Source: Macrostomum lignano
Taxonomy: Eukaryota
DNA length: 64,000 nucleotides
NCBI GenBank assembly: GCA_002269645.1
Contig: NIVC01002822.1
Coordinates: forward strand, 1 to 64,000
Direction of reading: 5' to 3'
Shown here: one piece after another, positions 4,973 to 63,592 of the stretch
Layout of the letters: each line of letters starts with the position of its first letter
How positions within the stretch are numbered: the first letter of the stretch is position 1
The notes under the pieces: generated by a model
Database searches by the model: none
Seen by the model: the letters and a program-made list of their open reading frames with translations, nothing else
Told to the model about the DNA's origin: nothing
Made by a program: the position numbers and the translations under genes

Positions 4973-6085
4973 ATGCAATATTCAGGTGAGCACAATCCTG
5001 AAACATTGTCTCATGTCATTTTTCACGCAATTATCGCAAAGCCAGCTCCCTCAGCTAAGCCAATCATTCCTAACTTTCCAGCCCGCGCTCTACTCGCCGT
5101 CCTCCTCGTCTGGCTGGCTCCTCGGCCGACCCGCTGCGACTGCCAGCGAGGTTGGCGCCGTCTGCAGACGAAGAGCTGTCTGAGCGACTCGCTGGCGCTG
5201 TGGACGAGACCCTCCGGCTCCGTCCTCGACTGCGTGCTCGAAGCCGAGCGCTCGAGCGGCCTTCTGGTGGCCCAGTTCGACTCGGACACTCGCCAGTGCT
5301 CGCTCTTCCAATACACCGCAGTGTGCCACCTCATCGATGGACTCGCTGCTGCAGAGAGCTCGAAGTCCCGCCGCTGTGCCGCATTCGCCAATGACAGAGC
5401 CGCCAAGTTCCTCACCTTGAGCAGGAAGCTCATGCTGGATGTGGGCTCGAAGCTGAGGGCCGCCTGGGTGATGAGCGACGATGCGGACGCCAGCAGGAGC
5501 AACTTGGTGTGCGGCCAGACGCAGCAGTGGATGTCGGAGAATGTGGAGTGGAGCAGCGAGGGAGCCAAGCTCGACGGAGTGTCGTCCAAGATGTGGCTGG
5601 AGAACGTGGAGCTCGCGAGCGTGCAGCAGAGACTCACGTGGCTGGTCAGGCTCAAGCGGACTGTCCGGAAGGAGGCAACGCTGCTCGAATCCTACAACTG
5701 CGACTCCACGGCTTTGAACGCAGCCTTTTGGGACGGCTGGACAGGCGGATGGGGCCTGTACTTCTTCAGGGTATCTTCATCTTACTTTGAGTACTTCACA
5801 CCATCTGTAACGAACTCGTTTGACGCGAATGGATTCGTTGAGGTCGGCATCAGTTCGGCGTCTCCGTCAAGCCGCGACTTCTTCTCCAACTTCGCGTTCG
5901 TGCCGCAGTCTGTTGTGAGCGCTGGTCCTCAGCGTAACGCAGCCGTGTCAACATGCCGCTGCATCCGCTTGGGATTTAGACCTGCCGACTCGCGAATGTT
6001 GAACGGCACAGTGCAGTCGGTGGCCATCATGAACGACACGATGACGGAGGCTGAGATCCGCAGCTTCTTCGGCCTGGTACGCTGA
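4973..6085 (+). CDS. Secreted PAN/Apple-like + LamG/ConA-like protein, copy 1; join(4973..4985,5082..6085), 338 aa
   Basis: ATGCAATATTCAG|gtgag...ctttccag|CC; removing the 96-nt phase-1 intron gives the signal peptide MQYSARALLAVLLVWLAPRPTRC. Cys pattern SVLDC...FDSDTRQCSL is PAN-like. LRAAWVMSDD...GAKLDGVSSKM...GTVQSVAIMNDTMTEAEIRSFF resembles the Laminin_G_3/ConA-like profile (recognised by eye). Confidence 0.85.
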   Translation: MQYSGEHNPETLSHVIFHAIIAKPAPSAKPIIPNFPARALLAVLLVWLAPRPTRCDCQRGWRRLQTKSCLSDSLALWTRPSGSVLDCVLEAERSSGLLVAQFDSDTRQCSLFQYTAVCHLIDGLAAAESSKSRRCAAFANDRAAKFLTLSRKLMLDVGSKLRAAWVMSDDADASRSNLVCGQTQQWMSENVEWSSEGAKLDGVSSKMWLENVELASVQQRLTWLVRLKRTVRKEATLLESYNCDSTALNAAFWDGWTGGWGLYFFRVSSSYFEYFTPSVTNSFDANGFVEVGISSASPSSRDFFSNFAFVPQSVVSAGPQRNAAVSTCRCIRLGFRPADSRMLNGTVQSVAIMNDTMTEAEIRSFFGLVR

Positions 6086-7449
6086 CCTGCCAGCCGCTCG
6101 GTTAATGCAAACTTACCAACTAAACAATTCAATGCACCGATGTTTTCTAAAAAACGACGTCCTTTTAGCACTGAAGAGTTTCCTTCTGTTGTGCCCGGCT
6201 GCATCTATCTACACCGATGAGCAATCTTTGTCTTTTGGTCAGTTGGGCCGGGGATTGCGCTCTAACCACTCCTGCCGCGTTTGCATATCCCACCCCTAAT
6301 CGTCTGGATTGGGGTTGGGTTTATTGTATCATTTTGGAGGGGTTTTTAGGGGGGGGTCCACCAATGAAGCCAAATTGCTGCACGCTTAAAACTTCTATGG
6401 CCAAACCACACTGAGAAATCACTTCAGCAAAAATCTAAGCGAGCCAGAATCTCAACTCAGTCAATAGGCCTGCGAACAAAAGATAGCAAGCACGTAGGAC
6501 ACCTGTTGAAGAATGGATCATTTTGGTCCATTTGGTCCATTCGGTCTATTCGGTCCATTTGGTCAATTTCGGGTCCAGAAGGGATCAATTCGGTCAAAGT
6601 AGCGGCGTTACTTTTCCAAATCCTGTCTCCAAAGCACAGAACGGTTTCACGGAGCCACCTGACTTGAACGTTGGCGGTGGTGGCTTTGAATTAAAAATTG
6701 GCCCTTCCGAAACGTTGATCCTCGATGATAGTGATTCCACAGACACGAAGGTAGATAGCGGAATAGACCAGCTCAAGCGGTAATCAATGAAGCAGGCGCA
6801 TAAAATCCGCCATCAATCTTGCGTAAGCGTAGAAGATGCGCAAACCTGGATGTTGAAAATCGGCTGTCGCCGGATCGCAGGAGTAGCTGTTGCTTAGGAG
6901 AACCTCGCTAAACTTACGAAGTACCAATTTTCTCGGACTAGAACAGACCGGCGTATTGCCCAATTGCATAATATCCATTTCATTGATCTCAGCGGAGGAG
7001 CTTCAACTTCATCGGCGTCCAATTGAATGAGATCCTCAAGCGTGCATTGCATTGCGGACTCTCGCTCAACTCTTTCGCCCAACTGGGAACTCGAAGCTCC
7101 AACAACGTCACCTTGCGACGCGTGCAATAGTCCGATACGAGTGCCGGTTGTTGAATCCAAAATTTAAGCCATTTGCCTTTGGTTGCAGTCGCGCGTTGAG
7201 CTATAGCTAAGCTATGAACCTTCTGCTACATATTTGACTTACAACTTCATGTTTACACTTTCTATTTTGGACCATAGACACTACCATAGATAGATAAGAC
7301 CAAGTATTTTGAGCGTGCAACAATGCATCATTGCCCAAACTGATGGTTTCACGCTTTAAATATCAATGGTCCAAACGCCTTCAAAATCATACAATATCGG
7401 TGAAGAACGGCTATTCATGCACCAATTGTTTATTTGATATCCAGCTCTG

Positions 7450-7692
7450 ATTGGCCGGACTGGCCGACACGCGCTCCCATTCCCAATTACTAGCCTCCGT
7501 GCCAAGTTGGATAGGCTAGTATGTACGCGCTTGTTGTCAGCCAGTCGTCAGTCGGAAGAAATCTATGAGCCTAGAGATTTGAGGGGTTATTTGATGAAAT
7601 ACGATCGTATACGTATATAAATGAGCTGGCGGTGGGCGAGGGAGAGCGTGCTGCTGAGTTCGGACTCGGCGACACAATGGGCTATAGTAAGC
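7450..7692 (+). promoter_or_regulatory. Putative Pol II promoter (CCAAT + TATA) with downstream splice donor
   Basis: ATTGG at 7450-7454, TATATAAA at 7614-7621, gtaag at 7687. The same arrangement occurs in the paralogous unit. Confidence 0.4.
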
Positions 7693-10407: not shown

Positions 10408-11516
10408 ATGCAATATTCAGGTGAGCAGAATCCTGAAACATTGTCTCATGTCATTTTTCATGCAATTATCGCAATTCCAGCTCGCTCAGCTCAGCCGGTC
10501 ACTTTCCAGCCCGCGCTCTACTCACCGTCCTCCTCGTCTGCCTGGCTGCTCGGCCCGCCCGCTGCGACTGCCAGCGAGGTTGGCGCCGTCTGCAGACGAA
10601 GAGCTGTCTGAGCGACTCGCTGGCGCTGTGGACGAGACCCTCCGGCTCCGTCCTCGACTGCGTGCTCGAAGCCGAGCGCTCGAGCGGCCTTCTGGTGGCC
10701 CAGTTCGACCCGGACACTCGCCAGTGCTCGCTCTTCCAATACACCGCAGTGTGCCACCTCATCGATGGACTCGCTGCTGCAGAGAGCTCGAAGTCCCGCC
10801 GCTGTGCCGCATTCGCCAATGACAGAGCCGCCAAGTTCCTCACCTTGAGCAGGAAGCTCATGCTGGATGTGGGCTCGAAGCTGAGGGCCGCTTGGGTGAT
10901 GAGCGACGATGCGGACGCCAGCAGGAGCAACTTGGTGTGCGGCCAGACGCAGCAGTGGATGTCGGAGAATGTGGAGTGGAGCAGCGAGGGAGCCAAGCTC
11001 GACGGAGTGTCATCCAAGATGTGGCTGGAGAACGTGGAGCTCGCGAGCGTGCAGCAGGGACTCACGTGGCTGGTCAGGCTCAAGCGGACTGTCCGAGTCG
11101 CGGCAACGCTGCTCGAATCCTACAACTGCGACTCCACGGGGGATCGAGGCGCGGCGTTTTGGGACGGCTGGACAGGCGGATGGGGCCTGTACTTCTTCAG
11201 AGTCGCTTCATCTTACTTTGAGTACTTTACACCATCTGCCACGAACTCGTTTGACCCGAACGGATTTGTTGAGGTCGGCGTCACTTCGGCGTCTCCGTCA
11301 AGCCGCGACTTCTTCTCCAACTCCGCGTTCGTGCCGCAATCCAGTTTGAATCATGGTGATGAGCGTAACGCAACCGTGTCGACATGCCGCTGCATCCGCT
11401 TGGGATTTCGACCTGGCGACTCGCGAATGCTGAACGGCACGGTGCATGCGGTGGCTTTCATGAACGACACGATGACGGAGGCTGAGATCCGCAGCTTCTT
11501 CGGCTTGGTGCGCTGA
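10408..11516 (+). CDS. Secreted PAN-like + LamG/ConA-like protein, copy 2; join(10408..10420,10510..11516), 339 aa
   Basis: Same ATGCAATATTCAG|gtgag exon. The 89-nt intron (not a multiple of 3) must be removed to join the signal peptide MQYSARALLTVLLVCLAARPARC to the 10662-11516 ORF, which supports the intron. Confidence 0.85.
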
Positions 11517-12007: not shown

Positions 12008-12489
12008 TTTGGAATTCAAGTTATAAAAAAATATTTCACCCGCTCTGCCTCAATCTGCCCCGATTTTTGGCCGAAGTATCGAAGGGAAAATCAGAATTGA
12101 TCGATCGTAAACGACATGTCCAGCCTTTTGTTTATCGCCTTAGATTTTTAGCACGCATGCGCAGCATTTGGCAGAGGTGACTAAGCCTGGATAAGGAAGT
12201 GTGGAGTGAATGATGACTTCAGATGCAAACACCTTTAACTACTACTAATAGTAAAGGGTGTTGCAATGCTGACTACTGGCCGTTGAGTTGCGGTGCTACT
12301 AACACTGAATAGCAATTTTGGAGGGCCAAATGTGAGTAGTGAGCTGGATCAATTTCAACAAGTAGCGAATTTAACAAGTTTAGCACGGCAGGGTATCACT
12401 GCACAACATGTTACTCTGTTGTATTTTATATAGTTCTGTAGTGAAAGTTAATTCTCATATTGCTTTCTTCTTATTTTATAAGCCCAAGC

Positions 12490-14760
12490 AGAGATTATTT
12501 GCAGAGCCATTATATTTGGACGCCCCTGCAAATAGTGCTGCCACCTCCTGGCATCGCGGCCAGATCAACAGATCGCGCATGACCTCGGTTGGCTCGAACG
12601 GCCGCGCCTCGGCTGCGGTAGCAAAGCTCAGCGCACCAGGGACACTCAGAGGTCGGCCCAGCGCGCAATGTCGCACTGAGCGGCGGCGTGAGCGCAACCG
12701 GCGAGGGCGACTCCGTGGCGCGGCCAGGCGCCTGTTGCCCCCCGTCCCTGCAATTCCAACTATGGATCCACCGGGTAGCGCCGGGGACCACGAGGCCAAT
12801 CTCCATCTGGCCCCAGCTGTACCAGTTGGCCGCACTCTGAAGGCCCCCTGGCGTCGCATCATTCTCATCGAGCTGGCCCACGACCTACAGCTGGACCTTA
12901 TCATGCTGCAGGAGGAGGTCGATCCGACTGATGGGGGTCGACCAGCGCGCCCGCTGCATCCGGATGTTGTGCGAGTATGCACCCATTGCTGCTCACCCTA
13001 AGGAGGCTCGTTCCTTCTTCGACTTCCTGGCTAGGCAGCTGGAAGAGGTGCCAAACCGCGACACGCTGTCGGTGCTCGGAGACCTGAACGCAGTCCCGCG
13101 GAGGTCCGAGCGCTCACCCTTTGTCACGGGACGCGAGAACGCCAACACCGATGCGCTGGAGGACCTGCTTGACCGGCTGGACCTGGTGTCCACGAAAACC
13201 CTAGCCCCCTGCCCGCCTGGTTACCTTTGCCGGCTGCAAGAGAAGGCGGCGGAACGCACGCGGGCAGAACGCCACGAGGAGACTGGCACAACTCGACCAT
13301 GCGCTGGTTCGCACTCGCGAGCGCCGCCGCGTCACCAACTGCGACACTATGGCTCCGCTAGCTCTCCGGTCAGACCACAGACTCCTGCTCTGCGACTTGC
13401 GGCTCCACGACCAGCTCTACCGACCTCCAAAGCAGCGGCCACGGCGCTACTATCGCGCTCTGTCGGACATCCGCGTGAATCGTCAAATTCGTGGCCCCTT
13501 TCGTCGGCGCGCTAGGAGACCAACGTGAGGCGGAGTATTCCGACATCAGCACCACCGTTAGGGCTGCTGCGGAGCAGACAGTCCCGCTGATGCAACCGGC
13601 GCAGAAATCGCTGGCTTTCTGGCAGAGCGACCCGACCATCAGGCAAGCGTGGCTCAGCATCGAGCGACTCCGCAGAAACCGGCGGCCGACAGGCGACGCT
13701 GAAGACGCGTTTGAGCGCCTTCTAGATGAGCGGCAGCAGGCCGCTGTCGACGACGCCGTCCGGACCATTACTGCAGCCGGCCTGAAGTGAGGAGCCGCGC
13801 AGTGTGGACGGCCGTCCGGACTCTGACGGGACGCAAAAAGCGCGTGGCGCTGAATCTGGCCGGTGATACCTCGGAGGAGCGCATTAATGAATTGCGGGAG
13901 TGAACGCAGGAGTGAACGCGCCATCGTCGTCACTGTTTGTCAGTTTTGCGCTCCCACTGGACATGCCGCTCCCAGCTGAGGAGGACATCTGCATTAGCCT
14001 AGTTACCATGGAGGACGTTGTGCTGTTCGCTCGGGAAACACCAGGCGGCAAGGCGCTCGGCCCCAAAAAAGTTTCGGTCGAAGAGCTGCGGCTCCGCTGT
14101 GTGGCCTCCTAGGTCACAGGCGTCGTGAACCAGCGTGCTCGCCCGCGCCCCTTCGCCCACCGAGTGGACCGTCGTGCACATCGTGCCGATCCCGAAGAAG
14201 GCAGGAACAACGTGGAAAGAAGACCACCACGGATGGATCTCGCTGTCCTGCCTCGCGAAGCTCTTCAACCGGCTGCTGCTGGATCGTCTGCAGTCGGTGC
14301 TAGACCCGTACCTTCGGTACGAGCAGAACGGATTCCGGCCGCAACGCGGTACAGTGACACAGATCATCGCACTCCGCCGTGTCATCGAGGAGGCGCGCAT
14401 CCGCCAGTCTATGCTGATCATTGTCTTCGTTGACTTTCGAAAGGCGTTTGACTCGGTGCTGAGAGCCGCGCTTCCCTTCGTCCCTCGAGCCTACCGGGTC
14501 GAAGGCAGCTAATCAAAGCGATACTCGAACTGCTGTGGTGATGGCGAGCGGCCAGTCTGACCTGTTTGAAAATTAATCGGGAATTTTGCAGGGCGACACG
14601 ACACGCTAGCACCGTTCCTCTTTGTGCTGCGGCTGGACTGGGTGCTCCAGACCGCGCTCCCTGGCTGACGACGGCTTCCTGCTGCGCAGACGCATCGGTC
14701 GCCGCCACGGCGAAAAGCGTCTGAATGAGCTTGGCTACGCCGACGACCTCGCCGATGCAT
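12490..14760 (+). mobile_element. Decayed RTE-like LINE with APE endonuclease and RT
   Basis: Endonuclease motifs LDLIMLQE, YAP and LGDLNA. RT motifs VPIPKK, LAKLFNRLLLDRL, EQNGFR, FVDFRKAFDS and LGYADDL (~14730). Multiple frameshifts and deletions; boundaries approximate. Confidence 0.85.
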
Positions 14761-14930
14761 CAAAGTTGGTACATCTCTTCGCTGTGCCCCTGTAAAAAAC
14801 CGGCCTCATCTTGCAGGGAGACCCTGACTCATGGCCATAACCTTGCGTGTCCTGATGTTAGCTAAATAAGGCCCTGCATTAGCGAAGCTGCGTTGCTAGA
14901 GCTGATGCCAGTAAAAAATTTAGAAAAAAA

Positions 14931-16977
14931 TTGAAGGTAAAAACAGGATACATAATAACTGATACTCAGTGCTTCATGGGTGATGCATCGGATCAAACAC
15001 AAAAATTGCAGGTAAACATAGGATACATAATAACTGATACTCAGTGCTTCATGGGTGATGCATCGGATCAAACACAAAAATTGCAGGTAAACATAGCATA
15101 CATAATAACTGGTACTCAGTGCTTCATGGGTGATGCATCGGATCAAACACAAAAATTGCAGGTAAACATAGCATACATAATAACTGATACTCAGTGCTTC
15201 ATGGGTGATGCATCGGATCAAACACAAAAATTGCAGGTAAACATAGCATACATAATAACTGATCCTCAGTGCTTCATGGGTGATGCATCGGATCAAACAC
15301 AAAAATTGCAGGTAAACATAGGATACATAATAACTGATCCTCAGTGCTTCATGGGTGATGCATCGGATCAAACACAAAAATTGCAGGTAAACATAGGATA
15401 CATAATAACTGATACTCAGTGCTTCATGGGTGATGCATCGGATCAAACACAAAAATTGCAGGTAAACATAGGATACATAATAACTGATACTCAGTGCTTC
15501 ATGGGTGATGCATCGGATCAAACACAAAAATTGCAGGTAAACATAGCATACATAATAACTGATCCTCAGTGCTTCATGGGTGATGCATCGGATCAAACAC
15601 AAAAATTGCAGGTAAACATAGGATACATAATAACTGATCCTCAGTGCTTCATGGGTGATGCATCGGATCAAACACAAAAATTGCAGGTAAACATAGGATA
15701 CATAATAACTGATCCTCAGTGCTTCATGGGTGATGCATCGGATCAAACACAAAAATTGCAGGTAAACATAGCATACATAATTACTGATACTCAGTGCTTC
15801 ATGGGTGATGCATCGGATCAAACACAAAAATTGCAGGTAAACATAGCATACATAATTACTGATACTCAGTGCTCCATGGGTGATGCATCGGATCAAACAC
15901 AAAAATTGCAGGTAAACATAGCATACATAATTACTGATACTCAGTGCTCCATGGGTGATGCATCGGATCAAACACAAAAATTGCAGGTAAACATAGGATA
16001 CATAATAACTGATACTCAGTGCTTCATGGGTGATGCATCGGATCAAACACAAAAATTGCAGGTAAACATAGGATACATAATAACTGATACTCAGTGCTCC
16101 ATGGGTGATGCATCGGATCAAACACAAAAATTGCAGGTAAACATAGGATACATAATAACTGATACTCAGTGCTTCATGGGTGATGCATCGGATCAAACAC
16201 AAAAATTGCAGGTAAACATAGCATACATAATAACTGATACTCAGTGCTTCATGGGTGATGCATCGGATCAAACACAAAAATTGCAGGTAAACATAGGATA
16301 CATAATAACTGATACTCAGTGCTTCATGGGTGATGCATCGGATCAAACACAAAAATTGCAGGTAAACATAGGATACATAATAACTGATCCTCAGTGCTTC
16401 ATGGGTGATGCATCGGATCAAACACAAAAATTGCAGGTAAACATAGCATACATAATTACTGATACTCAGTGCTTCATGGGTGATGCATCGGATCAAACAC
16501 AAAAATTGCAGGTAAACATAGCATACATAATTACTGATACTCAGTGCTCCATGGGTGATGCATCGGATCAAACACAAAAATTGCAGGTAAACATAGCATA
16601 CATAATTACTGATACTCAGTGCTCCATGGGTGATGCATCGGATCAAACACAAAAATTGCAGGTAAACATAGGATACATAATAACTGATACTCAGTGCTTC
16701 ATGGGTGATGCATCGGATCAAACACAAAAATTGCAGGTAAACATAGGATACATAATAACTGATACTCAGTGCTCCATGGGTGATGCATCGGATCAAACAC
16801 AAAAATTGCAGGTAAACATAGGATACATAATAACTGATACTCAGTGCTTCATGGGTGATGCATCGGATCAAACACAAAAATTGCAGGTAAACATAGGATA
16901 CATAATAACTGATACTCAGTGCTTCATGGGTGATGCATCGGATCAAACACAAAAATTGCAGGTAAACATAGGATACA
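14931..16977. repeat. 60-bp tandem array, left arm (~34 units)
   Basis: Unit ggtaaacataggatacataataactgatactcagtgcttcatgggtgatgcatcggatcaaacacaaaaattgca-type, with a few biallelic positions. Confidence 0.97.
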
Positions 16978-19804
16978 TCTTCTAATCTTCTAATCTTCTA
17001 ATCTTCTAATCTTCTAATCTTCTAATATATCTTCTAATCTTCTAATATATCTAAAGTAGCAACCCCCCCCCTCCACCGGCCCTGTCTGTCTGTGGGTATG
17101 TAACAGGTTATCTCCCAAAAGGCTCAACCGATTTTCTCCGTTTCTTCGCCAAAAGATGTCAAATGTGCCCGGGACGGTACATGTAATTTTATTAAGCTCT
17201 AGCTCAATGCTAAGGGGATTAAATATTCGAAAAACTGTTTTAAATGGCCTTTTTAGTGTATTTTTTTATCAGCCTGCGCGCAGCGAGAAACTTCACAGCC
17301 AATTTTAATGATTGCGCCAGAGCCAACTGATAAGAAAATTCACTTTGCCCCACTGCCCAGATAATTACTCTATTTAACTTGCGTAACCAATTAAGGGGGG
17401 GGGGGTATAATAAAAATTCTGGATGCTTTCCAATATACTAAAAATCAAAACTATGTACCTATAGGAACCTTCGCTTAACTTCACTCTACATGGTCGGAAT
17501 TTCGTGGGGTTTTCTGCATTCGATGCGTATTGATGGTGCGCTGGTACACAAAATTTTGCTAAGAAATTGCTTTATTTTTTCGGGCTTAAATATTCGAAAA
17601 ACTCGATTTTTACCCCGTTTTTTAAAGTTCAAACAGTTCTTTCCGATTGAGAAGCAGTCTGACTGCCGATGGAATTGTATTGCATCATAACTCAGTGCCA
17701 ACTATAGCATTGGTTCTCTACACTCGCGTGGAGAGCTACAAGCGTTGAAAGGTTGCGCAACACATTTTAGATACTGAAATTGAGGGGCGGGTGTCGCTAT
17801 TCAATTAGTCCTGGGCATTGGCTTGGTTGTTAATTTTAATGGATCAACTTGCAGGCCTCTCACTGTAACTGGCGCTGAATGTACACCTTTATGAATTTGA
17901 ATGCTTTAAAGCAGGAATGTTCAATTGTTATTTTTGCTTCGAGTTTTTCACTTTCAGAAGAGAGCCTTGTATTGCTGGAAAGAGCTAGAAACGCTGAGTT
18001 CGGGAATATAATTTGTTTGCTGAGATTCGAAAAATGAAAAGCACAGCATTAAAAAGAAGATTTCTATGCATTTTACTATATATACTCATTGTACACTCTC
18101 CCATAACGCAAACCCCTACTTTATCGCAACTCCACAATTCAAACCAGCGCCATTGGATTTCAATTTAGATTGCGTAACCATATTGTTGACTTTAATTGTT
18201 GACTTTAATAATTGAAACTGATATTGACTGCCTGAGAAATTGATTATGTCATAACTTGCTTCGAGCGATTTCTACTCTATGCTTGGAGTTTTCAGTGTTG
18301 AAATATATAAGTGCTAAAATTCATAGTGCTAAATTCAGAGAGCTAGCCTAGAAGTGAACAGACTGAACTGCTAATGCAGCGACGTGGGTTCGAATTTTTA
18401 GAGTGTAAAAGTTTTTTCTTAAAAATTTTAATTTCAAGACAGTTGAAGGAAACTTTAAAAAACGTCAAATAAATCAGATAAAAGAGAAGAAGCTACGAGC
18501 GTTCATGTAGTGTATTCGAAAATTCTTATTAAACTTTAACTTTTGAAAAGGATTATTGCACTAGATAAGAAATTAATTATTGTACGAGTACTAGCTGAGG
18601 AAATTTTCTTACTATCTTGCTTGGGGTACTTTATATCAGGGGATGCTTGCTATCGGAAGGACGCTTGCTCTTAGGGATGCTTGCTCAGGGGAGATTGCTG
18701 AGATGCCAAGACTTACTGGGGAATTATTCAAATATGCAGGCTTACTGGGGGAATTACTGAGATGTCAAAGGCTTAAAACGGACTTGCTGAGATGCCAAGG
18801 CTTAAGAGGAAATTGCTGAGATTTCAAGGCGTGGGGGAATCTCTGAGATGTCAAGGCTTTGGACGCCTTGATAGCTAAGATTTCAAGACTTACCGGGGGG
18901 AATAACTGAGATATAAAGGCTTACGCAGGGAATTACTGAGATGTGAAGGCTTGGGGAGGTATCGCTGAGATAGCAAGGCTTTGGATGGGGAGAAATTGCT
19001 AAGATGTCAAAACTTACTGGAGGAATCACCGAGATATAAAGGCTTACTTGGAGGACTGCTGAGATGTCAAGGCTTGGGGAAAATTTATGAGACGTCAAGT
19101 CTTGGGGGTTCCTGAAATTTCAAGTCTTGAGAGCGAATTGCTGAGATAACAAAGCTTAAGAGAGAATTACTGAGGTGTCAAGCTTGGGGGAAATTGTTGA
19201 GATGTCAATTCTTGGGGGGGGGATTCTATGGATTGGAGATTCTTTCCACAAGGGCTGCTTCTAATGGATATCTTTAGATAGGTGATTCATTGGGAAATTC
19301 CTTCGATGGGGGATTCTTTCGATGGAGGGTTCTTTGAATGGGGGGTTCTTTAGATGAATGATTCATTCGATAAAGGGATCCTTTTGGATATGGCATTGTT
19401 TGGACGGGGATTCTTTAGATGAGTCTTCGGATAGGGGTTTCTATAAATGGGAGGTTTTTTGGATGGGGTATTCTTTGCATGTGAGATTCTTTGTATCGTG
19501 GATTCTTTGGATGGGAGATTCAGTTGGGTTAAATTTTATTGTGTAAGAAAACTGTGGTTGGAGTTTGGACGAAAAGCCCAAACGGGGGTTGGAATTGGCT
19601 AGCTGAGGAAATTGTTTCACTAATCTTGCTGGGGGTACTTTCTATCAAGGGATGATTGCTATCAGAAGGACGTTTTCTCTTGGGGGATGCTTGCTCGGAA
19701 TAAAATTCTAAGATGTCAAGATTTACAGGGGAATTATTGAGATACATGTATAAAATCTTACCTTAAGAGAGACTTGCTGAGATGCCAAGGCTTGTGAGGG
19801 GAAT

Positions 19805-24759: not shown

Positions 24760-25730
24760 ATGCAGTATTCTGGTGAGCATTATCCTGAAACACTGTCTTA
24801 TGCCATTTTTCCCGCAGTTTTCACCATGCCAGCTCGCTCAGCTCAACCAGCCACTTTCCAGTCCGCGCTCTACTCGCCGTCCTCCTCGTCTGCCTAGTTT
24901 CTCGGCCCACCCGCTCCGACTGCCCCCTAGGTTGGCGCCGTCTGGAAACGAAGAGTTGTCTTAGCGACTCGCTGGCGCTGTGGACGCTGTGGCCTAACCC
25001 TTCCCGTATTCTCGCTGTGTGTTCAGCTCAGCCGGTCACTTTCCAGCCCGCGCTCTGCTCGCCGTCCTCTTCGTCTGCCTGGCTGCCTGGCCCGCCCGCT
25101 GCGACTGCCAACGACGTTGGCGCCGTCTGGAGACGAAGAGCTGCCTGAGCGACTCGCTGGCGCTGCTGATGAGACCGTCCGACTCCGAACTTGACTGCGT
25201 GCTCAAAGCCGAGCGCTCGAGCGGCCTGCAGGTAGTCCAGTTCGACTCGGACACTCGCCAGTGCTCGCTCTTCCAATACACCGCAGTGTGCCACCTCATC
25301 GATGGACTCGCTGCTGCAGAGAGCTCGAAGTCCCGCCGCTGTGCCGCATTCGCCAATGACAGAGCCGTCAAGTTCCTCACCTTGAGCAGGAAGCTCATTC
25401 TGGGTGTGGGCTCGAAGCTGAGGGCCGCCTGGGTGATGAGCGACGATGCGGACGCCAGCAGGAGCAACTGAGTGGAGCAGCGAAGGAGCCAAGCTAGACG
25501 GAGTGTCGTCCAAGATGTGGCTGGAGAACGTGGAGCTCGCGAGCGTGCAGCAGAGACTCACGTGGCTGGTCAGGCTCAAGCGGAGTGTCCGGAAGAGAGA
25601 AAACGCTGCTCGAATCCTACAACTGCGACTCCACGGGGAATCGGGGTGCGGCGTTCTGGAACGGCTGGACTGGTGGATGGGGCCTGTACTTCTTCAGGGT
25701 AGCTTCATCCTTGTTTGAGTACTACACGCC
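24760..25730 (+). pseudogene. PAN-like + LamG-like copy 3, pseudogene
   Basis: ATGCAGTATTCTG|gtgag exon at 24760-24772. The acceptor and exon-2 start are duplicated (24862 and 25047). A ~40-nt deletion creates TGA at 25469-25471, there is a +1 frameshift near 25600, and the copy is truncated after EYYTP (~25730). Confidence 0.9.
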
Positions 25731-25888
25731 TTCTTTTTTCTGTAAACAAGCTGCAGAAAGGTCTTCTGGAATAAGCAGGGCGTTGCAGATAGGAAAGCTT
25801 CTGGTGAATAAGCGAAGCTTCCATCAGATAGGCATTTTTCTTGCTGCAAGTTATCTAAGATCTTGAGAGGCTAGAGTTGACAGGATTA

Positions 25889-54428: not shown

Positions 54429-55360
54429 TCAAGGCGACCGCACCAGAACGAAGAAGCTGCTGATCTCAGCCTCCGTCATCGTGTCGTTTATGATGGCCAC
54501 CGCCTGCACTGTGCCGTTCAGCATTCGCGGGTCACCAGGTAGAAATCCAAAGCGGATGCAGCGGTATGACAACACGGTTGCGTTGCGCTCATCACCACGG
54601 TCCAAACTCGCCTGAAGCATGAATCCGGAGTTGGAGAAGAAGTCGCGGCTTGACGGAGACGCCGAAGTGACGCCGACCTCAACGAATCCATTCGGGTCAA
54701 ACGAGCTCGTGGCAGATGGTGTGATGTACTCAAAGTAATATGAAGCCACCCTGAAGAAGTACAGGCCCCATCTGCCAGTCCAGCCGTCCCAAAAAGCAGC
54801 GCCCGATCCCCCGTGGAGTCGCAGTTGTAAGATTCGAGCAGCGGTGCCTCCACTCGGACAGTCCGCTTGAGCCTGACCAGCCACGTGAGTCCCTGCTGCA
54901 CGCTCGCGAGCTCCACGTTCTCCAGCCACATCTTGGACGACACTCCGTCGAGCTTGGCTCCCTCGCTGCTCCACTCCACATTCTCCGACATCCACTGCTG
55001 TGTCTGGCCGCACACCAAGTTGCTCCTGCTGGAGTCCGCATCGTCGCTCATCACCCAGGCGGCCCTCAGCTTCGAGCCCACACCCAGCATGAGCTTCCTG
55101 CTCAAGGTGAGGAACTTGGCGGCTCTGGCATTGGCGAATGCGGCACAGCGGCGGGACTGCGAGCTCTCTGCAGCAGCGAGTCCATCGATGAGGTGGCACA
55201 CTGCGGTGTATTGGAAGAGCGAGCACTAGCGAATTTCCGAGTCGAACTGGGCCACCTGCAGGCCGGTCGAGGCGTCGTAGAACTGGACGAACTTGATGAT
55301 GCACTTGCTGATGCTGATCGGAGTCTTGATTGCCGTAGAGCAATAGCCAGCCCTCTCTAT
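54429..55360 (-). pseudogene. PAN-like + LamG-like copy 4, pseudogene
   Basis: TAG at 55228-55226 where other copies have CAG; 1-nt deletion near 54805; divergent 5' end with no clear start. Confidence 0.88.
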
Positions 55361-57634: not shown

Positions 57635-58669
57635 TCAGGGCAACCGCACCAAACCGAAGAAGCTGCTGATCTCAGCCTCCGTCATCGTGTCGTTCATTAC
57701 GGCCACCGCCTGCACCGTGCCGTTAAGCATTCGCGAGTCGGAATGTCGAAATCCCAAGCGGATGCAGCGACATGTTGGAATCTCAGTTTCATTATGGCTA
57801 CTGGTTAGAGTTACATTCGACTGCGGCACGAACCCGGAGTTGGAGAAGAAGTCGCGACTTGACGGAGATGCAGAAGTGATGCCGACCTCAACAAATTCAT
57901 CCGGGTTAAAGAAGTTTGTTGAAGCAGCTGTTATGAACACAGAATAGTTTGGAGCTTTCCTAAAGAAGTACAAACCCCGCGTATTAGGATATCCGTCCCA
58001 GAAGGCGGCCCCTATTAGACCTGAGACGCAGCTGTAACTCTCGAGCAGCGTTGCCTCTACTCGGACAGTCCGCTTGAGCCTGATCAGCCACGTGAGTCCC
58101 TGCTGCACGCTCGCGAACTCCACGTTCTCCAGCCACATCTTGGACGACACTCCGTCGAGCTTGGCTCCCTCGCTGCTCCACTCCACATTCTCCGACATCC
58201 ACTGCTGCGTCCGGCCGCACACCAAGTTGCTCCTGCTGGCGTCCGCATCGTCGCTCATCACCCAGGCGGCCCTCAGCTTCGAGCCCACACCCAGCATGAG
58301 CTTCCTGCTCAAGGTGAGGAACTTGGCGGCTCTGGCATTGGCGAATGCGGCACAGCGGCGGGACTGCGAGCTCTCTGCAGCAGCGAGTCCATCGATGAGG
58401 TGGCACACTGCGGTGTACTGGAAGAGCGAGCACTGGCGAGTGTCCGAGTCGAACTGGGCCACCAGCAGATTGCTCGTGGCGCCGTAGAACAGGGCGACCA
58501 GGATGAGGCACTCGCTGATTCCGGATGGAGTTTCGGCCACCTGCACCGCCTGGACCTCAGGTAAGCACTGCGGCAGTTCGAGTCTCTGCCACTGGCCAGA
58601 AGAGCTGTCGCAGGAGATCAACTGGACGCAGCAGAGCAGGATCAGAGCGCAGCCTGTAATTAGTTGCAA
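57635..58669 (-). CDS. PAN-like + LamG-like copy 5; intact frame, start codon absent at the homologous position
   Basis: Uninterrupted ORF. ATT ACA GGC (58660-58652) aligns to ATG GCA GGC of copy 6. Signal-like GCALILLCCVQLISC. Confidence 0.8.
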   Translation of the reverse strand: MQLITGCALILLCCVQLISCDSSSGQWQRLELPQCLPEVQAVQVAETPSGISECLILVALFYGATSNLLVAQFDSDTRQCSLFQYTAVCHLIDGLAAAESSQSRRCAAFANARAAKFLTLSRKLMLGVGSKLRAAWVMSDDADASRSNLVCGRTQQWMSENVEWSSEGAKLDGVSSKMWLENVEFASVQQGLTWLIRLKRTVRVEATLLESYSCVSGLIGAAFWDGYPNTRGLYFFRKAPNYSVFITAASTNFFNPDEFVEVGITSASPSSRDFFSNSGFVPQSNVTLTSSHNETEIPTCRCIRLGFRHSDSRMLNGTVQAVAVMNDTMTEAEISSFFGLVRLP

Positions 58670-58749
58670 GAAGTTTGTTGTTTAATTCCATGTCCGCTAA
58701 ATTAATTCAGTTTGATGGTTCACAGGGCTGCTTAAGGCACTGCCGTAAA

Positions 58750-58979
58750 TTAAGAGCGACAGACGACCTGAGACCAGCTACTCATAATCGGTTTTTCCTT
58801 ATTTCGGCGCGGCCACTTGCACTATACTTGCCCTGGAGACCAGCCTTCATGGGTGAATCGCACGATAAGCGATGTGCCGATTTCTGTGCACAGACCCCAA
58901 TCGTTGTGGCCGCGTACGGAATCGAACCCGGGCCAGGTACTTTATTTGTAAGACTCGTTACCGCTGAGCTAGCTTGCCC
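58750..58979 (-). mobile_element. tRNA-derived SINE-like element
   Basis: A box TAGCTCAGCGG (58971-58961) and B box GGTTCGATTCC (58928-58918) on -; no complete cloverleaf. Related heads at ~56120-56180, ~60240-60960 and 63900-63950. The 3' boundary is uncertain. Confidence 0.65.
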
Positions 58980-59704
58980 CTGCATGAGTGCTTACCTGAG
59001 CGCAGTTCATTGGTTGCTTGCATTGCTTCTGGTGCAATTGTGCCTGAGCGTAAAAAGCTTCAATAGCAGAAATACACTTGGCTGCAGCTTGCGGGCTCCT
59101 TGGCGCTTTTTTATGCTGAGGGCTGGGCTGGCAGCTGCAGAAGATTCTCAGATGAAGCAACAGGGAGGCCAAGCGCAGCCTTCCCGAACCCCCTCATGGC
59201 CGATGAGATGGGAGGTGGCCAATTGTGAGAAACTTTGTCTCCGTTTCCTCGGCAACCTACCGGGATGCAACGCTTGAGTAGTGCTTTGATTGCGACTTCC
59301 TATTTAATTAGCGAGTGAAAAATTCATGAATGCCATGGATTCGTGGATTCTGTAGAGCAATGTCTGTAGCCCTTACTATTATTTGAAGGCCCGTTTCCGT
59401 TTGTTTAGAAACTACCAGCCAAAGAGGCAAGCCTAGAATGAAGCAAGCTTCATTTATAAACTTTTTTTGCTTTTTTCATAACAAAGCTGGGCTTCTAAAA
59501 GCCAACAGCCTCCAGACTGCTCCATCATTGTATTCTGCTCCATAAGTTTTGCAAGTTGTGAAAAGTTAAGTAATTCACTATTTGTGAGGCCACAACACCA
59601 AAGTATAAATTCAATTTGACTTTCCACTGCTCTCTTTTTGTTTTCAAAATCTATCGTCATTAACAAGTTCCATATTGTGATTGATGTTTGATGAGCACCA
59701 CAGA

Positions 59705-60261: not shown

Positions 60262-60932
60262 ATGTGACCATGTACAGAATCGAAGATGTGACCATGTACA
60301 GAATCGAAGATGTGATCATGTACAGAATCGAAGATGTGACCATGTACAGAATCAAAGATGTGATCATGTACAGAATCGAAGATGTGACCATGTACAGAAT
60401 CGAAGATGTGATCATGTACAGAATCAAAGATGTGATCATGTACAGAATCGAAGATGTGATCATGTACAGAATCGAAGATGTGACCATGTACAGAATCGAA
60501 GATGTGACCATGTACAGAATCGAAGATGTGACCATGTACAGAATCGAAGATGTGACCATGTACAGAATCGAAGATGGGACCATGTACAGAATCGAAGATG
60601 TGACCATGTACAGAATCGAAGATGTGACCATGTACAGAATCGAAGATGTGACCATGTACAGAATCGAAGATGTGACCATGTACAGAATCGAAGATGTGAC
60701 CATGTACAGAATCGAAGATGTGACCATGTACAGAATCGAAGATGTGACCATGTACAGAATCGAAGATGTGACCATGTACAGAATCGAAGATGTGACCATG
60801 TACAGAATCGAAGATGTGACCATGTACAGAATCGAAGATGTGACCATGTACAGAATCGAAGATGTGACCATGTACAGAATCGAAGATGTGACCATGTACA
60901 GAATCGAAGATGGGACCATGTACAGAATCGAA
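60262..60932. repeat. 24-bp tandem array (~28 units)
   Basis: (atgtgaccatgtacagaatcgaag)n. Confidence 0.98.
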
Positions 60933-61414
60933 CCCAGGTGCCTTGTAGTACTCGTTAGTTTTAGTTACTTGAATTGCGTTTGTCGCAAATGAGTTCAAGT
61001 TTTTGAAAAGCTTCAAAACACACCCGCTTGCGGCTTCTTAGCGACTGGCAGCTGCAGACTGGGGGAGACGGCTGCTTTCTCACACTTCTTATGCCACCGA
61101 TGTCAGTGGAAAAAACCTCCAGTTATCTCGGCATCTTCTTACTTGTTAATACACTTTTCAGAACTAAACTCAAATTGTAAGTTTCAATCAGTCCATTGGG
61201 AAGCCAGTCAGTCCATGGGAGCAGCTCCAAACTGCTGCAGTGCGCAACGCTTGAGAAATCTTCTCATTCGATTTCTAACTGGCAGTGTAAAAAATTTATG
61301 AATGCTGATAACAATAGCCAATTCTGTCAGTTCAAGGCACCGCCAGCAGCAGAGGCAAGCCCGGCTGGAAACGAATGTGTTTCTGAAACTCTCTAATTTC
61401 TTGTATTTAAATGC

Positions 61415-61885
61415 ACTGCTCTCTATGCTTTCTATCCTGCTCCCTATGCTCTCTATCCTGCTCCCTATGCTCTCTATCCTGCTCCCTATGCTCTCTATCC
61501 TGCTCCCTATGCTCTCTATCCTGCTCCCTATGCTCTCTATCCTGCTCCCTATGCTCTCTATCCTGCTCCCTATGCTCTCTATCCTGCTCCCTATGCTCTC
61601 TATCCTGCTCCCTATGCTCTCTATCCTGCTCCCTATGCTCTCTATCCTGCTCCCTATGCTCTCTATCCTGCTCCCTATGCTCTCTATCCTGCTCCCTATG
61701 CTGCTCCTTATGCTCCCTATGCTGTTCCCTATACCCTCTATACTGCTCCCTGTGCTGCTTCTTATGTTCCCTTTACTGCTCCTTATGCTCCCTATACTGC
61801 TCCCTATACTGCTCACAATGCTGCTCCCTACACTGCTCCCTACACTGCTCCCTACACTGCTCCCTGTACTGCTCCCTATGCTGCC
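61415..61885. repeat. 21-bp array grading into 12-bp units
   Basis: (tgctccctatgctctctatcc)n then (tgctccctacac)n; the paralogous shorter 12-mer run is at 56620-56765. Confidence 0.95.
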
Positions 61886-62574
61886 CCCTGAGCTGTTGAG
61901 TACGTCTGAGTTGCAAATGCACATTGTTGGTCTCAAAAAACAGCAAGGTGCTTTGATTTTATCGATGTTTTAAAACGTACCGATTCAGTAGGTATTAAAC
62001 TTTTAATGCAAAAGTGAAACAGGAATATTATGAATAGAAGCAGTGCTGCTTATTTAAAATTAGAGTCACTAATCCTCAGATCAGCTCTGAAAGATGAAGC
62101 GAGGCTCAACTTCCAGGTCATTTAAGAAGATGTTGAAAAGTCTACTTTTTATAGTAGTAGTTAGGACTTTTGCTACAATATTGCGATCCGCTTGATTTCC
62201 ATCCTTTAATTCTATTACAGAAAAGTCGTGCTTTACGCATGACACCTTGGCGTCTCTCCCTGACCTCACGGCCTCATCTGATGGCAGGATGAAATCGAGC
62301 CTTCGTCCATCATTACGCTCCTAAATCCTACCCCTTACCCTCCCAGAAAGGATAACCTACTCGTAGTTTGAAGGGGGTGAGGTTCACAACACCCAAATCT
62401 TTATCCATGATGCCACACAAGTGCGTACTCGCACACTGCATGCCATTTCGATATATTGTTCGCTCGTATTTGTACGGAAGTCTACAGTTTGTAGACTTGG
62501 CTTGTCTTCGGCTCACATAAGTTTCAGGTAACTCCCACTCCAACAATTAAAAGTAACTCAATCAGTTCAGTACT

Positions 62575-63592
62575 TCAGGGCGACCGCACGAGGCCGAAGA
62601 AGCTGCGGATCTCAGCCTCCGTCCTCGTGTCGTTTATGATGGCCACCGCCTGCACCGTGCCCTTCAGCATTCGAGAGTCGCCAGGTCGAAATCCCAAGCG
62701 GATGCAGCGGTATGTCGACACGGCGCCGTTACGCTGAGGAAGATCGCGCACAGCAGACCGCGGCACGAACCCGGAGTTGGAGAAGAAGTCGCGGCTCGAC
62801 GGAGACGCTGAAGTGATGCCGACCTCAACGAATTCATTCGGGTCAAACGAGTTCGTGGCAGATGGTGTGATGTAGTCAAAGAAAGATAAAGCCACCCTGA
62901 AGAAGTACAGTCCATATCCACCCGTCCAGCCGTCCCAAAACGCCGCGCCCAAAGCCGTGGAGTCGCAGTTGTAGGATTCGAGCAGCGGTTTCTCTCTCGG
63001 GGACTCCCGCTTGAGCCTGACCAGCCACGTGAGTCCCTGCTGCACGCTCGCGAGCTCCACGTTCTCCAGCCACATCTTGGACGACACTCCGTCGAGCTTG
63101 GCTCCCTCGCTGCTCCACTCCACATTCTCCGACATCCACTGCTGTGTCTGGCCACACACCAAGTTGCTCCTGCTGGCGTCCGCATCGTCGCTCATCACCC
63201 AGGCGGCCCTCAGCTTCGAGCCCACATCCAGCATGAGCTTCCTGCTCAAGGTGAGGAACTTGGCGGCTGTCTTTGGCGAATGCGGCACAGCGGCGGGGCT
63301 GCGAGCTCTCTGCAGCAGCGAGTCCATCGATGAGGTGGCACACTGCGGTGTACTGGAAGAGCGAGCACTGGTGAGTGTCCGAGTCGAACTGGGCCACCAG
63401 CTGGCCGGTCGAGTCTTCCGTGGACATGGCGAACAGGACGCAGTCGGAGACGCCGGATGGAGTTTCGTGCACCCGCACTGCTTGGGCCTCGGGCAGGCAC
63501 TGCGGCAATCCCAGATTCTGCCACTGGACAACCGAGCTGTCGCAAATAATCAGCTGGACGCAGCAGAGCAGAAGCAGAGCGCAGCCTGCCAT
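62575..63592 (-). pseudogene. PAN-like + LamG-like copy 6; single 2-nt frameshift (pseudogene or assembly error)
   Basis: ATG at 63592 with signal peptide MAGCALLLLCCVQLIIC, intronless. It reads gacagcc where other copies read gacagagcc/gccagagcc near 63268. Total 1018 nt. Confidence 0.8.

What the first reader, a model, noticed from the sequence alone, without database searches (positions are those of the whole stretch)
5660..63000. C-terminal haplotypes are shuffled across N-terminal classes (combinatorial N x C mosaics)
Seen: copy 1 (+ class N-terminus) and copy 6 (- class N-terminus) share DSTAL(N/G)AAFW and PQRN(A/G)AVST. Copy 2 (+) and copy 4 (-) share DSTGDR and GDERNATV. Copy 3 has DSTGNRG like copy 2 but the aagagagaaa-like segment of copy 6. 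Copy 5 is unique. Inference: crossovers or conversion within the shared core recombine N-terminal PAN modules with different lectin-domain variants. This would be a germline modular diversification system and is the best candidate for an undescribed system in this window.
Basis: partly seen in the sequence, partly recalled or inferred. Interest (0 to 1): 0.8.

Follow-up and report, generated by a model that had tools for sequence, protein, structure and literature searches.

The report
Patchwork gene conversion among flatworm paralogs
Six neighbouring copies of a secreted, lectin-like flatworm (Macrostomum) gene have exchanged short stretches of sequence by ordinary gene conversion, so the mosaics are real, but nothing points to a dedicated diversification machine.

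Summary
The window carries six paralogs of an uncharacterised Macrostomum secreted protein with a PAN/apple-like N-terminus and a ConA-like beta-sandwich.

Tree incongruence is significant in the quartet c1, c2, c4, c6:
- The flanks (N-terminus, last codons, 3'UTR) give 24:0:1 informative sites for c1c2|c4c6.
- The variable C-terminal segment gives 4:11:0 in favour of c1c6|c2c4 (Fisher p=8e-7).
- SH tests reject the rival tree in each partition.

- The exchanged units are short internal patches, interleaved with class-specific sites.
- The 3' end of each gene returns to its N-terminal class, so these are not whole C-terminal modules swapped by crossovers in the core.
- The shared patches are themselves about 20% diverged, so the exchanges are old.
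- Three copies (c1, c2, c5) look intact and three (c3, c4, c6) are defective.

The most striking feature is a roughly 400-bp core kept nearly identical at synonymous sites. dS is 0-0.09 there, against 0.2-1.4 next to it. This holds in all six copies and in a frameshifted M. lignano paralog. Metagenomic relatives show the same identical-block and hypervariable-block pattern.

Best reading: germline interlocus gene conversion in a clustered multigene family. This is a new member of a known kind.

The parts
4973..6085 (+). Copy c1, + class, apparently intact. Exon 1 is 4973-4985 (ATGCAATATTCAG). The phase-1 intron is 4986-5081. Exon 2 is 5082-6085. Within exon 2 the core is 5266-5661 and the variable C segment is 5662-5984. 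Patches: V1 5662-5680, V2 5705-5722, V6 5908-5945.
10408..11516 (+). Copy c2, + class, intact once the 89-nt intron (10421-10509) is spliced out. Read-through of the intron is out of frame, which supports the intron. Core 10694-11089. Patches: V2 11133-11153, V6 11339-11376.
24760..25735 (+). Copy c3, + class pseudogene. It has extra sequence between exon 1 and exon 2, including a partial duplication. It has a 41-bp deletion after 25469 and a 1-nt insertion, and homology ends near 25735. It carries V2 of the c2/c4 type (25630-25650). Its V1 (25586-25605) resembles both c1 and c6.
54429..55292 (-). Copy c4, - class pseudogene. Exon 1, the intron and the start of exon 2 are deleted. There is an in-frame TAG at 55228-55226 and a 1-nt frameshift near 54811. 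Core 54861-55256. V6 (54575-54612) is of the c2 type.
57635..59023 (-). Copy c5, - class, apparently intact and the most divergent in the C-terminal segment. Exon 1 is 59023-58996 (ATGCAAGCAACCAATGAACTGCGCTCAG). The intron is 58995-58654. Exon 2 is 58653-57635. Core 58068-58463.
62575..63997 (-). Copy c6, - class. Exon 1 is 63997-63970, the intron is 63969-63586 and exon 2 is 63585-62575. A single 2-bp deletion after 63269 shifts the frame. Core 63005-63398. V2 (62944-62961) and V6 (62721-62758) are of the c1 type.
5266..5661 (+). The roughly 400-bp near-identical core, given in c1 coordinates; the equivalents in the other copies are listed above. It encodes ...LLVAQFDSDTRQC...WVMSDDADASRSNLVCGQTQQW...LTWLVRLKR. 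Identity is 97-100% between any two copies, and it is flanked on both sides by much more divergent sequence.

Best explanation
The window holds a clustered multigene family of a Macrostomum-lineage secreted protein. Three copies lie on the + strand on the left and three on the - strand on the right. The protein has a signal peptide, a six-cysteine PAN/apple-like domain, a helix and a ConA-like/LamG-type beta-sandwich.

Two old paralog classes differ completely in promoter-side flank, exon 1, signal peptide and N-terminus, and 3'UTR.

Germline non-allelic (interlocus) gene conversion acts on the homologous part of the genes in two ways:
1. It repeatedly homogenises a ~400-bp central core. The core therefore stays almost identical in every copy, pseudogenes included.
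2. More rarely, it copies short tracts of tens of bp up to about 100-200 bp between the more divergent C-terminal halves. This leaves patches, mostly in loops of the beta-sandwich, that group copies across the two classes (c1 with c6; c2 and c3 with c4).

Shown: the copies, their lesions, the segment-specific divergence and the tree incongruence.

Inferred: that the process is gene conversion, that the tracts are short and multiple, that the divergent flanks limit how far conversion spreads, and that selection for variety in the loops helps keep the variable parts from being homogenised.

The outcome is a modest, evolutionary-timescale patchwork of the kind seen in many tandem families. It is not a programmed N x C combinatorial system.
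For: - Six copies exist, with class-specific flanks on BOTH sides.
- Every pairwise comparison shows an identity plateau of 97-100% over the core, falling on either side.
- dS in the core is 0-0.09. It is 0.19-0.27 in the variable C segment among c1, c2, c4 and c6, 0.7-0.9 against c5, and 0.6-1.1 in the N-terminus between classes.
- The M. lignano paralog at L001:9741-10651 has several frameshifts, so it is a pseudogene. Yet its core differs from the window copies by dS 0.02-0.07, while its flanks are at dS of about 1.0-1.4. Protein-level selection cannot do that.
- Quartet site patterns are 24:0:1 in the flanks and 4:11:0 in the variable segment. The SH and RELL tests agree, and the clustering test is significant.
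- Discordant patches are interleaved with class-specific sites, and the 3' end returns to class. This fits short multiple tracts.
- GC3 is 0.86 in the core against 0.50-0.66 in the variable segment, consistent with GC-biased conversion.
- A further M. lignano gene model, P0003, combines an L001-like N-terminus and the identical core with C-terminal states otherwise seen separately in c1, c2, c4 and c6.
- Relatives from metagenome contigs show the same architecture. For L002 versus L004 there are 0/30 synonymous differences in a core block and 56/83 in the C-terminal part. Short cassettes also occur in all four combinations.
Against: - The PHI test is not significant (p=0.77).
- A GENECONV-like scan gives only p=0.10 for c1-c6 and p=0.14 for c2-c4. 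Tract-level support is weaker than site-pattern support. The number of independent exchange events behind the 11 discordant sites may be as low as 3-4.
- The shared patches are about 20% diverged, so donors and direction cannot be assigned.
- Some nucleotide-level constraint on the core cannot be excluded.
- The source species and assembly could not be identified or checked.
- The metagenome contigs are short-read assemblies that break inside the core, so some of their cassette combinations could be chimeric.
Confidence: 0.75

Rival explanations
1. Reciprocal crossovers, or long conversion tracts starting in the shared core, reassort complete N-terminal (PAN) modules with complete C-terminal (lectin) variants. 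This gives a selected germline N x C combinatorial repertoire.
For: - The core is an obvious stretch of homology between otherwise divergent N and C parts.
- The variable C segment as a whole prefers the tree c1c6|c2c4.
- P0003 pairs a third N-terminal type with c1/c6-like C patches.
- Metagenome relatives combine different N patches with different C parts around identical blocks.
Against: - In all copies the last ~35 codons, the stop context and the 3'UTR follow the N class: 16 sites to 0 for c1c2|c4c6 over c1c6|c2c4, plus one c1c4|c2c6 site.
- Class-specific sites at 718, 838, 948 and 1011 sit between the shared patches.
- A crossover between the + and - copies, which are inverted relative to each other, would invert the intervening 40-50 kb rather than simply swap ends.
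- The core boundaries do not match domain boundaries.
Confidence: 0.12
2. No exchange at all. The shared motifs are retained ancestral states, or convergent changes under similar selection on the loops of the lectin-like domain.
For: - The shared patches are short, lie mainly in predicted loops and evolve at dN/dS of about 1.
- They are about 20% diverged within a type.
- PHI is not significant.
Against: - Eight consecutive discordant sites, including synonymous ones, fall within 31 bp, and there is a shared 3-bp indel.
- The discordant classes are asymmetric at 11:0.
- Synonymous divergence for the same gene pair differs tenfold between segments.
- The pseudogene L001 keeps a near-identical core.
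Confidence: 0.04
3. Assembly artefact. Near-identical cores caused mis-joins or collapsed haplotypes, creating false mosaics.
For: - The core is 97-100% identical between copies.
- The metagenome contigs of relatives break exactly in such blocks.
- The 1-2-nt frameshifts in c4 and c6 could be sequencing errors.
Against: - A mis-join in the core would swap everything downstream, 3'UTR included, and this is not seen.
- The mosaic patches are far shorter than any read.
- Kilobase-long minisatellite arrays are resolved in the window, which suggests long reads.
- Each copy has private substitutions throughout.
Confidence: 0.04
4. A programmed cassette system. Defective or truncated copies serve as silent donors for frequent, possibly somatic, segmental conversion into the expressed genes, with the invariant blocks acting as homology anchors. 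Analogues are chicken Ig pseudogene V segments and Anaplasma msp2.
For: - Half of the copies here, and the L001 copy, are defective yet keep a pristine core and largely open C-terminal frames.
- The block architecture recurs in a second species, with 100% identical anchors.
Against: - The shared patches in the window are old, at about 20% diverged.
- Three different intact genes exist rather than one expression site.
- The pseudogene lesions are ordinary birth-and-death decay.
- No somatic data exist, and no associated enzyme gene lies in the window. The only recombinase and reverse transcriptase genes belong to a DIRS-like and a LINE-like element.
Confidence: 0.05

Closest known systems
Interlocus (non-allelic) gene conversion and concerted evolution in tandem multigene families. 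Textbook cases, from general knowledge, are MHC 'patchwork' alleles, globins, opsins and KIR.
   Same: - Paralogs lie in one cluster.
- Tree discordance is segment-specific.
- Synonymous divergence is very low in the converted stretch and sits next to old flanks.
- The tracts are short and interleaved.
- Pseudogenes take part.
- GC3 is raised in the homogenised part.
   Different: - The contrast here is unusually sharp: dS is about 0.02 in a 400-bp core against 0.2 to more than 1 beside it.
- The homogenised stretch is internal to one exon and cuts across domain boundaries.
- It is shared with a dispersed pseudogene copy in the M. lignano assembly.
SmPoMuc polymorphic mucins of the flatworm Schistosoma mansoni (PMC2576457)
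   Same: - It is a flatworm multigene family.
- Mosaic genes are formed by recombination between members, with pseudogenes as a pool of variants.
- Conserved blocks are kept alike by gene conversion.
- The authors propose birth-and-death turnover.
   Different: - SmPoMucs are mucins. Their variability lies mainly in the tandem-repeat exon 2 array, and the exchanged units are exons and introns of many-exon genes.
- Here a single large exon encodes a PAN-like plus ConA-like protein, and the patches are sub-exonic.
- There is no sequence relationship between the two families.
- No host-parasite context is known, as Macrostomum is free-living.
Sp185/333 (SpTransformer) genes of the purple sea urchin (PMC3342357)
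   Same: - Small two-exon genes with a short leader exon.
- A tight cluster of six genes in mixed orientation.
- Shared blocks allow exchange.
- The neighbourhood is rich in repeats.
   Different: - Sp185/333 diversity is a presence/absence mosaic of 25-27 elements. Each gene is bracketed by GA microsatellites, and almost no pseudogenes occur.
- Here the variation is substitutional, in fixed positions.
- The minisatellites do not bracket each gene in a regular way.
- Half of the copies are defective.
Segmental gene conversion from silent donors. From general knowledge: chicken Ig light-chain pseudogenes, Anaplasma msp2 and Borrelia vlsE. msp2 is cited as reference 43 in PMC2576457.
   Same: A variable region is flanked by conserved sequence, and truncated or defective copies carry alternative variable segments.
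   Different: - Those systems have one expression site and act somatically or clonally at high rate.
- Here there are three intact genes, the exchanges are old, and there is no evidence of somatic change.

Membership tests
Interlocus gene conversion / concerted evolution | Two or more paralogous copies in the same genome | tested here: met
   Six copies lie within 59 kb.
Interlocus gene conversion / concerted evolution | Different segments of the same genes support different trees | tested here: met
   Site patterns are 24:0:1 in the flanks and 4:11:0 in the variable segment, Fisher p=8e-7. The SH test rejects the rival tree in each partition.
Interlocus gene conversion / concerted evolution | Synonymous divergence in the converted stretch is far below that of adjacent sequence | tested here: met
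   dS is 0-0.09 in the core, 0.19-0.27 in the variable C segment and 0.6-1.1 in the N-terminus. This also holds for the pseudogene L001.
Interlocus gene conversion / concerted evolution | Identifiable tracts with statistically supported end points and a donor/acceptor direction | tested here: inconclusive
   In the GENECONV-like scan the best fragment is c4-c6, p=0.002, while c1-c6 gives p=0.10 and c2-c4 gives p=0.14. PHI gives p=0.77. Donors cannot be assigned.
ConA-like lectin / LamG-type beta-sandwich | Sequence match to a curated family model above its cut-off | tested here: not met
   Laminin_G_3 scores only 15.2 bits (E=0.025) against a cut-off of 27.6. One relative has a weak precomputed hit.
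ConA-like lectin / LamG-type beta-sandwich | Jelly-roll beta-sandwich fold | tested here: met
   The AF2 model has pLDDT 81. Foldseek matches the lectin-like domains of trans-sialidase and of clostridial neurotoxins, with E from 2e-8 to 1e-5 and probability 1.0.
ConA-like lectin / LamG-type beta-sandwich | Carbohydrate binding | not testable with these tools
   This needs glycan arrays or binding assays.
PAN/apple domain | Sequence match to a Pfam PAN model | tested here: not met
   No PAN family appears at E<=0.1.
PAN/apple domain | Alpha/beta fold with a six-cysteine pattern like known PAN modules | tested here: inconclusive
   There are six Cys in the N-terminal ~90 residues. The top Foldseek hits are all PAN/apple modules (plasminogen, HGF N domain, Sarcocystis SML-2, Eimeria PAN), but with E of 0.1-1 and probability up to 0.99.
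Sp185/333-type element mosaics | Presence/absence mosaic of sequence elements, with each gene bracketed by microsatellites | tested here: not met
   The copies align colinearly with only 1-3-nt indels in the intact parts. The tandem repeats do not bracket each copy regularly.
Programmed segmental conversion from silent donors | New variants arise somatically or clonally, and there is a single expression site | not testable with these tools
   Only one genomic sequence is available. Three copies look intact, which argues against a single expression site.
Dscam-like mutually exclusive splicing | Variable cassettes are alternative exons around shared constant exons of one gene | tested here: not met
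   Each copy carries its own core and its own variable parts within one continuous exon.
Diversity-generating retroelement | Template/variable repeat pair with adenine-specific differences next to a dedicated RT | tested here: not met
   The differences cover all six unordered base-pair classes: 138 transitions (A/G 90, C/T 48) and 147 transversions, with no adenine-specific excess. The RT genes in the window belong to a DIRS-like and a LINE-like element.

The most novel reading that the evidence does not exclude
The family could be a selected cassette-exchange repertoire. Under this reading, nucleotide-identical 'anchor' blocks are conserved as an architecture in at least two macrostomid species and channel frequent segmental conversion. 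Decayed copies are among the donors. The product would be a combinatorial set of secreted PAN-ConA-like recognition proteins, immune or reproductive, in a free-living flatworm, possibly with somatic activity.
Probability: 0.12. Interest if true: 0.75.

Novelty: new member of a known kind. Interest (0 to 1): 0.35.

Why it matters
If the reading is right, this is a clean small example of how gene conversion can do two things in the same exon. It can freeze one part of a gene family while leaving neighbouring parts free to diverge and occasionally swap patches.

The family itself is undescribed. It has no Pfam family and no paper turned up, and only about 27 representatives exist among 1.8 billion protein clusters. 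The known members are the M. lignano proteins plus unidentified relatives on metagenome contigs.

The sharp alternation of identical and hypervariable blocks recurs in a second species. That makes the family a reasonable candidate for a rapidly diversifying recognition molecule in flatworms, and worth an expression and population check.

It does not by itself reveal a new mechanism.

Tried and rejected
- **PHI test.** It was not significant, because incompatible sites are finely interleaved. It was kept as evidence against long tracts.
- **Species identification.** The ECSIT fragment search found nothing. Exact look-ups of eleven window proteins (one, ten) found none in the collection. L001's 20-kb flanks share no repeats with the window. 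The species is unresolved: a Macrostomum, either M. lignano or a near relative.
- **Metagenome scan for relatives.** DNA of six more relatives was then obtained one at a time.
- **First AlphaFold run.** With 6 sequences it failed for the C-terminal domain (pLDDT 39.6). A 22-sequence alignment gave pLDDT 81.
- **Antisense ORF across the core.** It is open in all six copies but truncated to 44 aa in the distant relative L002. It was rejected as a by-product of codon composition.
- **c5 start codon.** c5 first appeared to have lost its start codon. This was rejected after a conserved 28-nt upstream exon 1 was found in both c5 and c6.
- **Other mechanisms.** A DGR-type mechanism was rejected, and Dscam-type splicing was rejected.
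- **RNA genes.** No tRNA genes or Rfam families were found in the window.
- **Literature.** Searches found no description of this family.

Full report
**What is there**

The window is eukaryotic. It is rich in minisatellites and carries retroelement genes and an ECSIT gene.

BLAST of one copy against the window finds six paralogs. Three lie on the + strand:
- c1 4973-6085
- c2 10408-11516
- c3 24760 to about 25735

Three lie on the - strand:
- c4 55292-54429
- c5 59023-57635
- c6 63997-62575

The closest database protein is a hypothetical protein of Macrostomum lignano, P0001, at 70% identity. An exhaustive HMMER search of 1.84 billion cluster representatives finds only 27 relatives. These are M. 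lignano gene models and short metagenome contigs. This is therefore a small, undescribed flatworm family. No window protein is in the collection by exact look-up, and the source species could not be fixed.

**Gene models**

Both classes are two-exon genes with a phase-1 intron.
- The + class has a 13-nt exon 1 (ATGCAATATTCAG|GTGAGC) and an 89-96-nt intron. Read-through of the intron is in frame in c1 but out of frame in c2, which supports splicing.
- The - class has a conserved 28-nt exon 1 (ATGCAAG...CAG|GTRAGC) and a 340-385-nt intron.

Status of each copy:
- c1, c2 and c5 are intact.
- c6 has one 2-bp deletion, after 63269.
- c4 lacks exon 1, the intron and the start of exon 2. It also has an in-frame TAG (55228-55226) and a 1-nt frameshift.
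- c3 has a 41-bp deletion and a frameshift, and loses homology near 25735.

**The protein**

Pfam gives only a sub-threshold Laminin_G_3 hit. An AlphaFold model built on 22 family sequences has pLDDT 81. It shows three parts:
- a six-cysteine alpha/beta N-terminal domain;
- a long helix;
- a beta-sandwich that Foldseek matches to the ConA-like lectin domains of trans-sialidases and clostridial neurotoxins (E down to 2e-8).

The N-terminal domain's best structural matches are all PAN/apple modules, but the scores are weak (E 0.1-1). The first is unproven.

**Checking the observation**

All quoted motifs are present, and c5 is indeed the outlier. The two N-terminal classes are real. Upstream flank, exon 1, signal peptide and N-terminus are 87-98% identical within the + class. 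They are about 43-51% identical, effectively unalignable, between classes.

For the quartet c1, c2, c4, c6:
- Informative sites in the flanks (end of the N-terminal segment, last ~35 codons, 3'UTR) are 24:0:1 for c1c2|c4c6.
- In the variable C-terminal segment they are 4:11:0 in favour of c1c6|c2c4 (Fisher p=8e-7).
- The 11:0 asymmetry of the two discordant patterns has p=0.001.
- Eight consecutive discordant sites lie within 31 bp (p=0.013).
- A JC-likelihood SH test rejects c1c6|c2c4 in the flanks (delta lnL 45.7). It rejects c1c2|c4c6 in the variable segment (delta lnL 16.1, p=0.035; RELL 0.976).

**What the mosaic looks like in detail**

It is not an N module joined to a C module.
- The discordant sites form patches at alignment columns 708-709, about 750-760 (with a 3-bp indel), 892 and 965-995.
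- Class-specific sites at 718, 838, 948 and 1011 lie between them.
- From the last ~35 codons onward, every copy again follows its N-terminal class: GLVR* in the + class, GLVRSP*/LP* in the - class, each with its own 3'UTR.
- Within the main patch, c1 and c6 differ at 7 of 38 nt and c2 and c4 at 8 of 38. The exchanges are therefore old.
- PHI is not significant (p=0.77). A GENECONV-like scan supports only some fragments. Both fit many short tracts rather than one long one.
- Mapped on the model, the variable residues fall mostly in loops and edge strands of the beta-sandwich.
- Patch codons evolve at dN/dS of about 1 (0.95-1.35), against 0.18-0.68 in the rest of that segment.

**The more remarkable feature: the core**

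Every pairwise comparison shows a plateau of 97-100% identity over about 400 bp, dropping sharply on both sides. This core runs from ...LLVAQFD in the second half of the PAN-like domain to ...LVRLKR in the beta-sandwich. Its boundaries do not match domain boundaries.

Synonymous divergence by segment:
- Core: 0-0.09.
- Variable C segment among c1, c2, c4 and c6: 0.19-0.27.
- Variable C segment against c5: 0.7-0.9.
- N-terminus between classes: 0.6-1.1.

The M. lignano copy at L001:9741-10651 is itself a multiply frameshifted pseudogene. Its core still differs from the window copies by dS 0.02-0.07, while its flanks are at dS of about 1.0-1.4. Selection on the protein cannot preserve synonymous sites in a pseudogene, so recurrent homogenisation by gene conversion is the economical explanation. 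GC3 is 0.86 in the core against 0.50-0.66 in the variable segment, as expected under GC-biased conversion.

An antisense ORF that is open across the core in all copies shrinks to 44 aa in a distant relative. I regard it as a by-product of codon composition.

**Beyond the window**

The M. lignano model P0003 combines an L001-like N-terminus and the identical core with C-terminal states found separately in the window copies:
- VGVT as in c2 and c4;
- PRSAV as in c6;
- SAGPQRN and RPAD as in c1;
- MLKGT as in c6.

Seven metagenome contigs of a more distant relative (42% protein identity) show the same design in stronger form:
- Blocks that are 100% identical in nucleotides alternate with stretches at 30-60% identity.
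- For L002 versus L004 there are 0/30 synonymous differences in a core block and 56/83 in the C-terminal part.
- Two adjacent short cassettes (NGQTQQ/NSQ.PK and AINVTFTS/ASGVEWTK) occur in all four combinations.

These contigs are short-read assemblies that often begin inside a conserved block. Some combinations may therefore be chimeric. The block structure itself is robust.

**Mechanism**

The best-supported account is germline interlocus gene conversion in a birth-and-death multigene family. Conversion is frequent in the core. It is rare, short-tract and old in the variable C-terminal half. Divergent flanks, and probably selection for loop diversity, limit how far it spreads.

Rivals considered:
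- Whole-module N x C reassortment by crossovers. This is disfavoured by the 3' ends and the interleaving. In addition, crossovers between the inverted + and - copies would invert about 40-50 kb.
- No exchange at all, which the statistics and the dS contrasts reject.
- Assembly artefact, which would swap the 3'UTRs too.
- A programmed pseudogene-donor system, for which there is no positive evidence and whose patches would be expected to be fresh rather than old.
- A DGR-type mechanism and Dscam-type splicing, both excluded.

**Comparison with known systems**

The closest mechanistic analogue in flatworms is the SmPoMuc family of Schistosoma mansoni. There, mosaic genes arise by recombination among members, pseudogenes included, and conserved blocks are kept alike by conversion (PMC2576457).

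The Sp185/333 cluster of sea urchins shares the small two-exon genes, a six-gene cluster and exchange through shared blocks. Its diversity, however, is a presence/absence mosaic of elements bracketed by microsatellites, and it has almost no pseudogenes (PMC3342357).

Neither family is related in sequence to the one here.

**Verdict**

The mosaics are real and recombination is required. They are, however, the ordinary product of gene conversion in a clustered family, not a new kind of diversification system. The undescribed family, and its unusually sharp alternation of frozen and hypervariable blocks across species, deserve a modest follow-up on expression, population variation, and gDNA versus cDNA.

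Noticed in passing
window 14926-16978 and 22211-23759; also 36895-38981, 41360-43485, 39318-40048, 33075-33970, 34520-35423, 30042-31122, 60262-60932 and 61416-61882: There are very many long minisatellite arrays with periods of 20-75 bp, each up to about 2 kb. The same 75-bp unit forms two arrays about 5 kb apart. Several arrays create long spurious ORFs in all frames.
   Followed up: partly
window 48071-51173 (+): This looks like a DIRS-like retroelement. It has a CCCH zinc-finger ORF, then a reverse transcriptase/RNase H ORF (48391-50181), then a tyrosine-recombinase (phage-integrase family) ORF (50154-51173). All are open.
   Followed up: partly
window 32556-32933 and 33952-34446 (-): Two exons of an ECSIT homologue (Pfam ECSIT_N, E=6e-31 and 3e-6) lie between the + and - halves of the cluster. 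A 20-bp minisatellite sits in the intervening intron.
   Followed up: partly
window 40050-40530 (-), continuing into the 21-bp array at 39318-40048: An ORF with a Fic-domain-like motif ([11 protein letters not shown], identified by eye; Pfam gave no hit) runs straight into a 35-copy 21-bp minisatellite that stays in frame.
   Followed up: no
window about 58975-58915 (c5 intron) and about 63945-63905 (c6 intron), - strand: The introns of both - class genes hold a tRNA-like fragment with A-box and B-box-like motifs (TAGCTCAGCGGTA ... GGTTCGAT(T/A)CC). ARAGORN and Rfam call nothing, so it is probably a SINE remnant. The c6 intron also holds a (TG)n microsatellite at about 63855-63812.
   Followed up: partly
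window 5023-5655 (-), 10499-11083 (-), 54867-55229 (+), 58074-58487 (+), 63011-63682 (+): A long antisense ORF (MSLTSHVS.CCTLASSTF...) is open across the conserved core of every copy, and a third sense frame is open as well. In the distant relative L002 the antisense ORF is only 44 aa, so it is probably a codon-composition by-product.
   Followed up: yes
window 12400-14520 (both strands) and 26353-26802 (+): There are LINE-type reverse-transcriptase fragments (RVT_1, E=1e-10 at 14135-14512) and a weak DDE_3 transposase fragment. Decayed mobile elements therefore lie between copies c2 and c3.
   Followed up: no
L002, L004-L009 (metagenome contigs): Contigs of the related family mostly begin inside the conserved blocks at different points, as expected if the assembler broke at a multi-copy identical repeat. 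L004 ends in an assembly-loop duplication of its last ~45 nt.
   Followed up: partly
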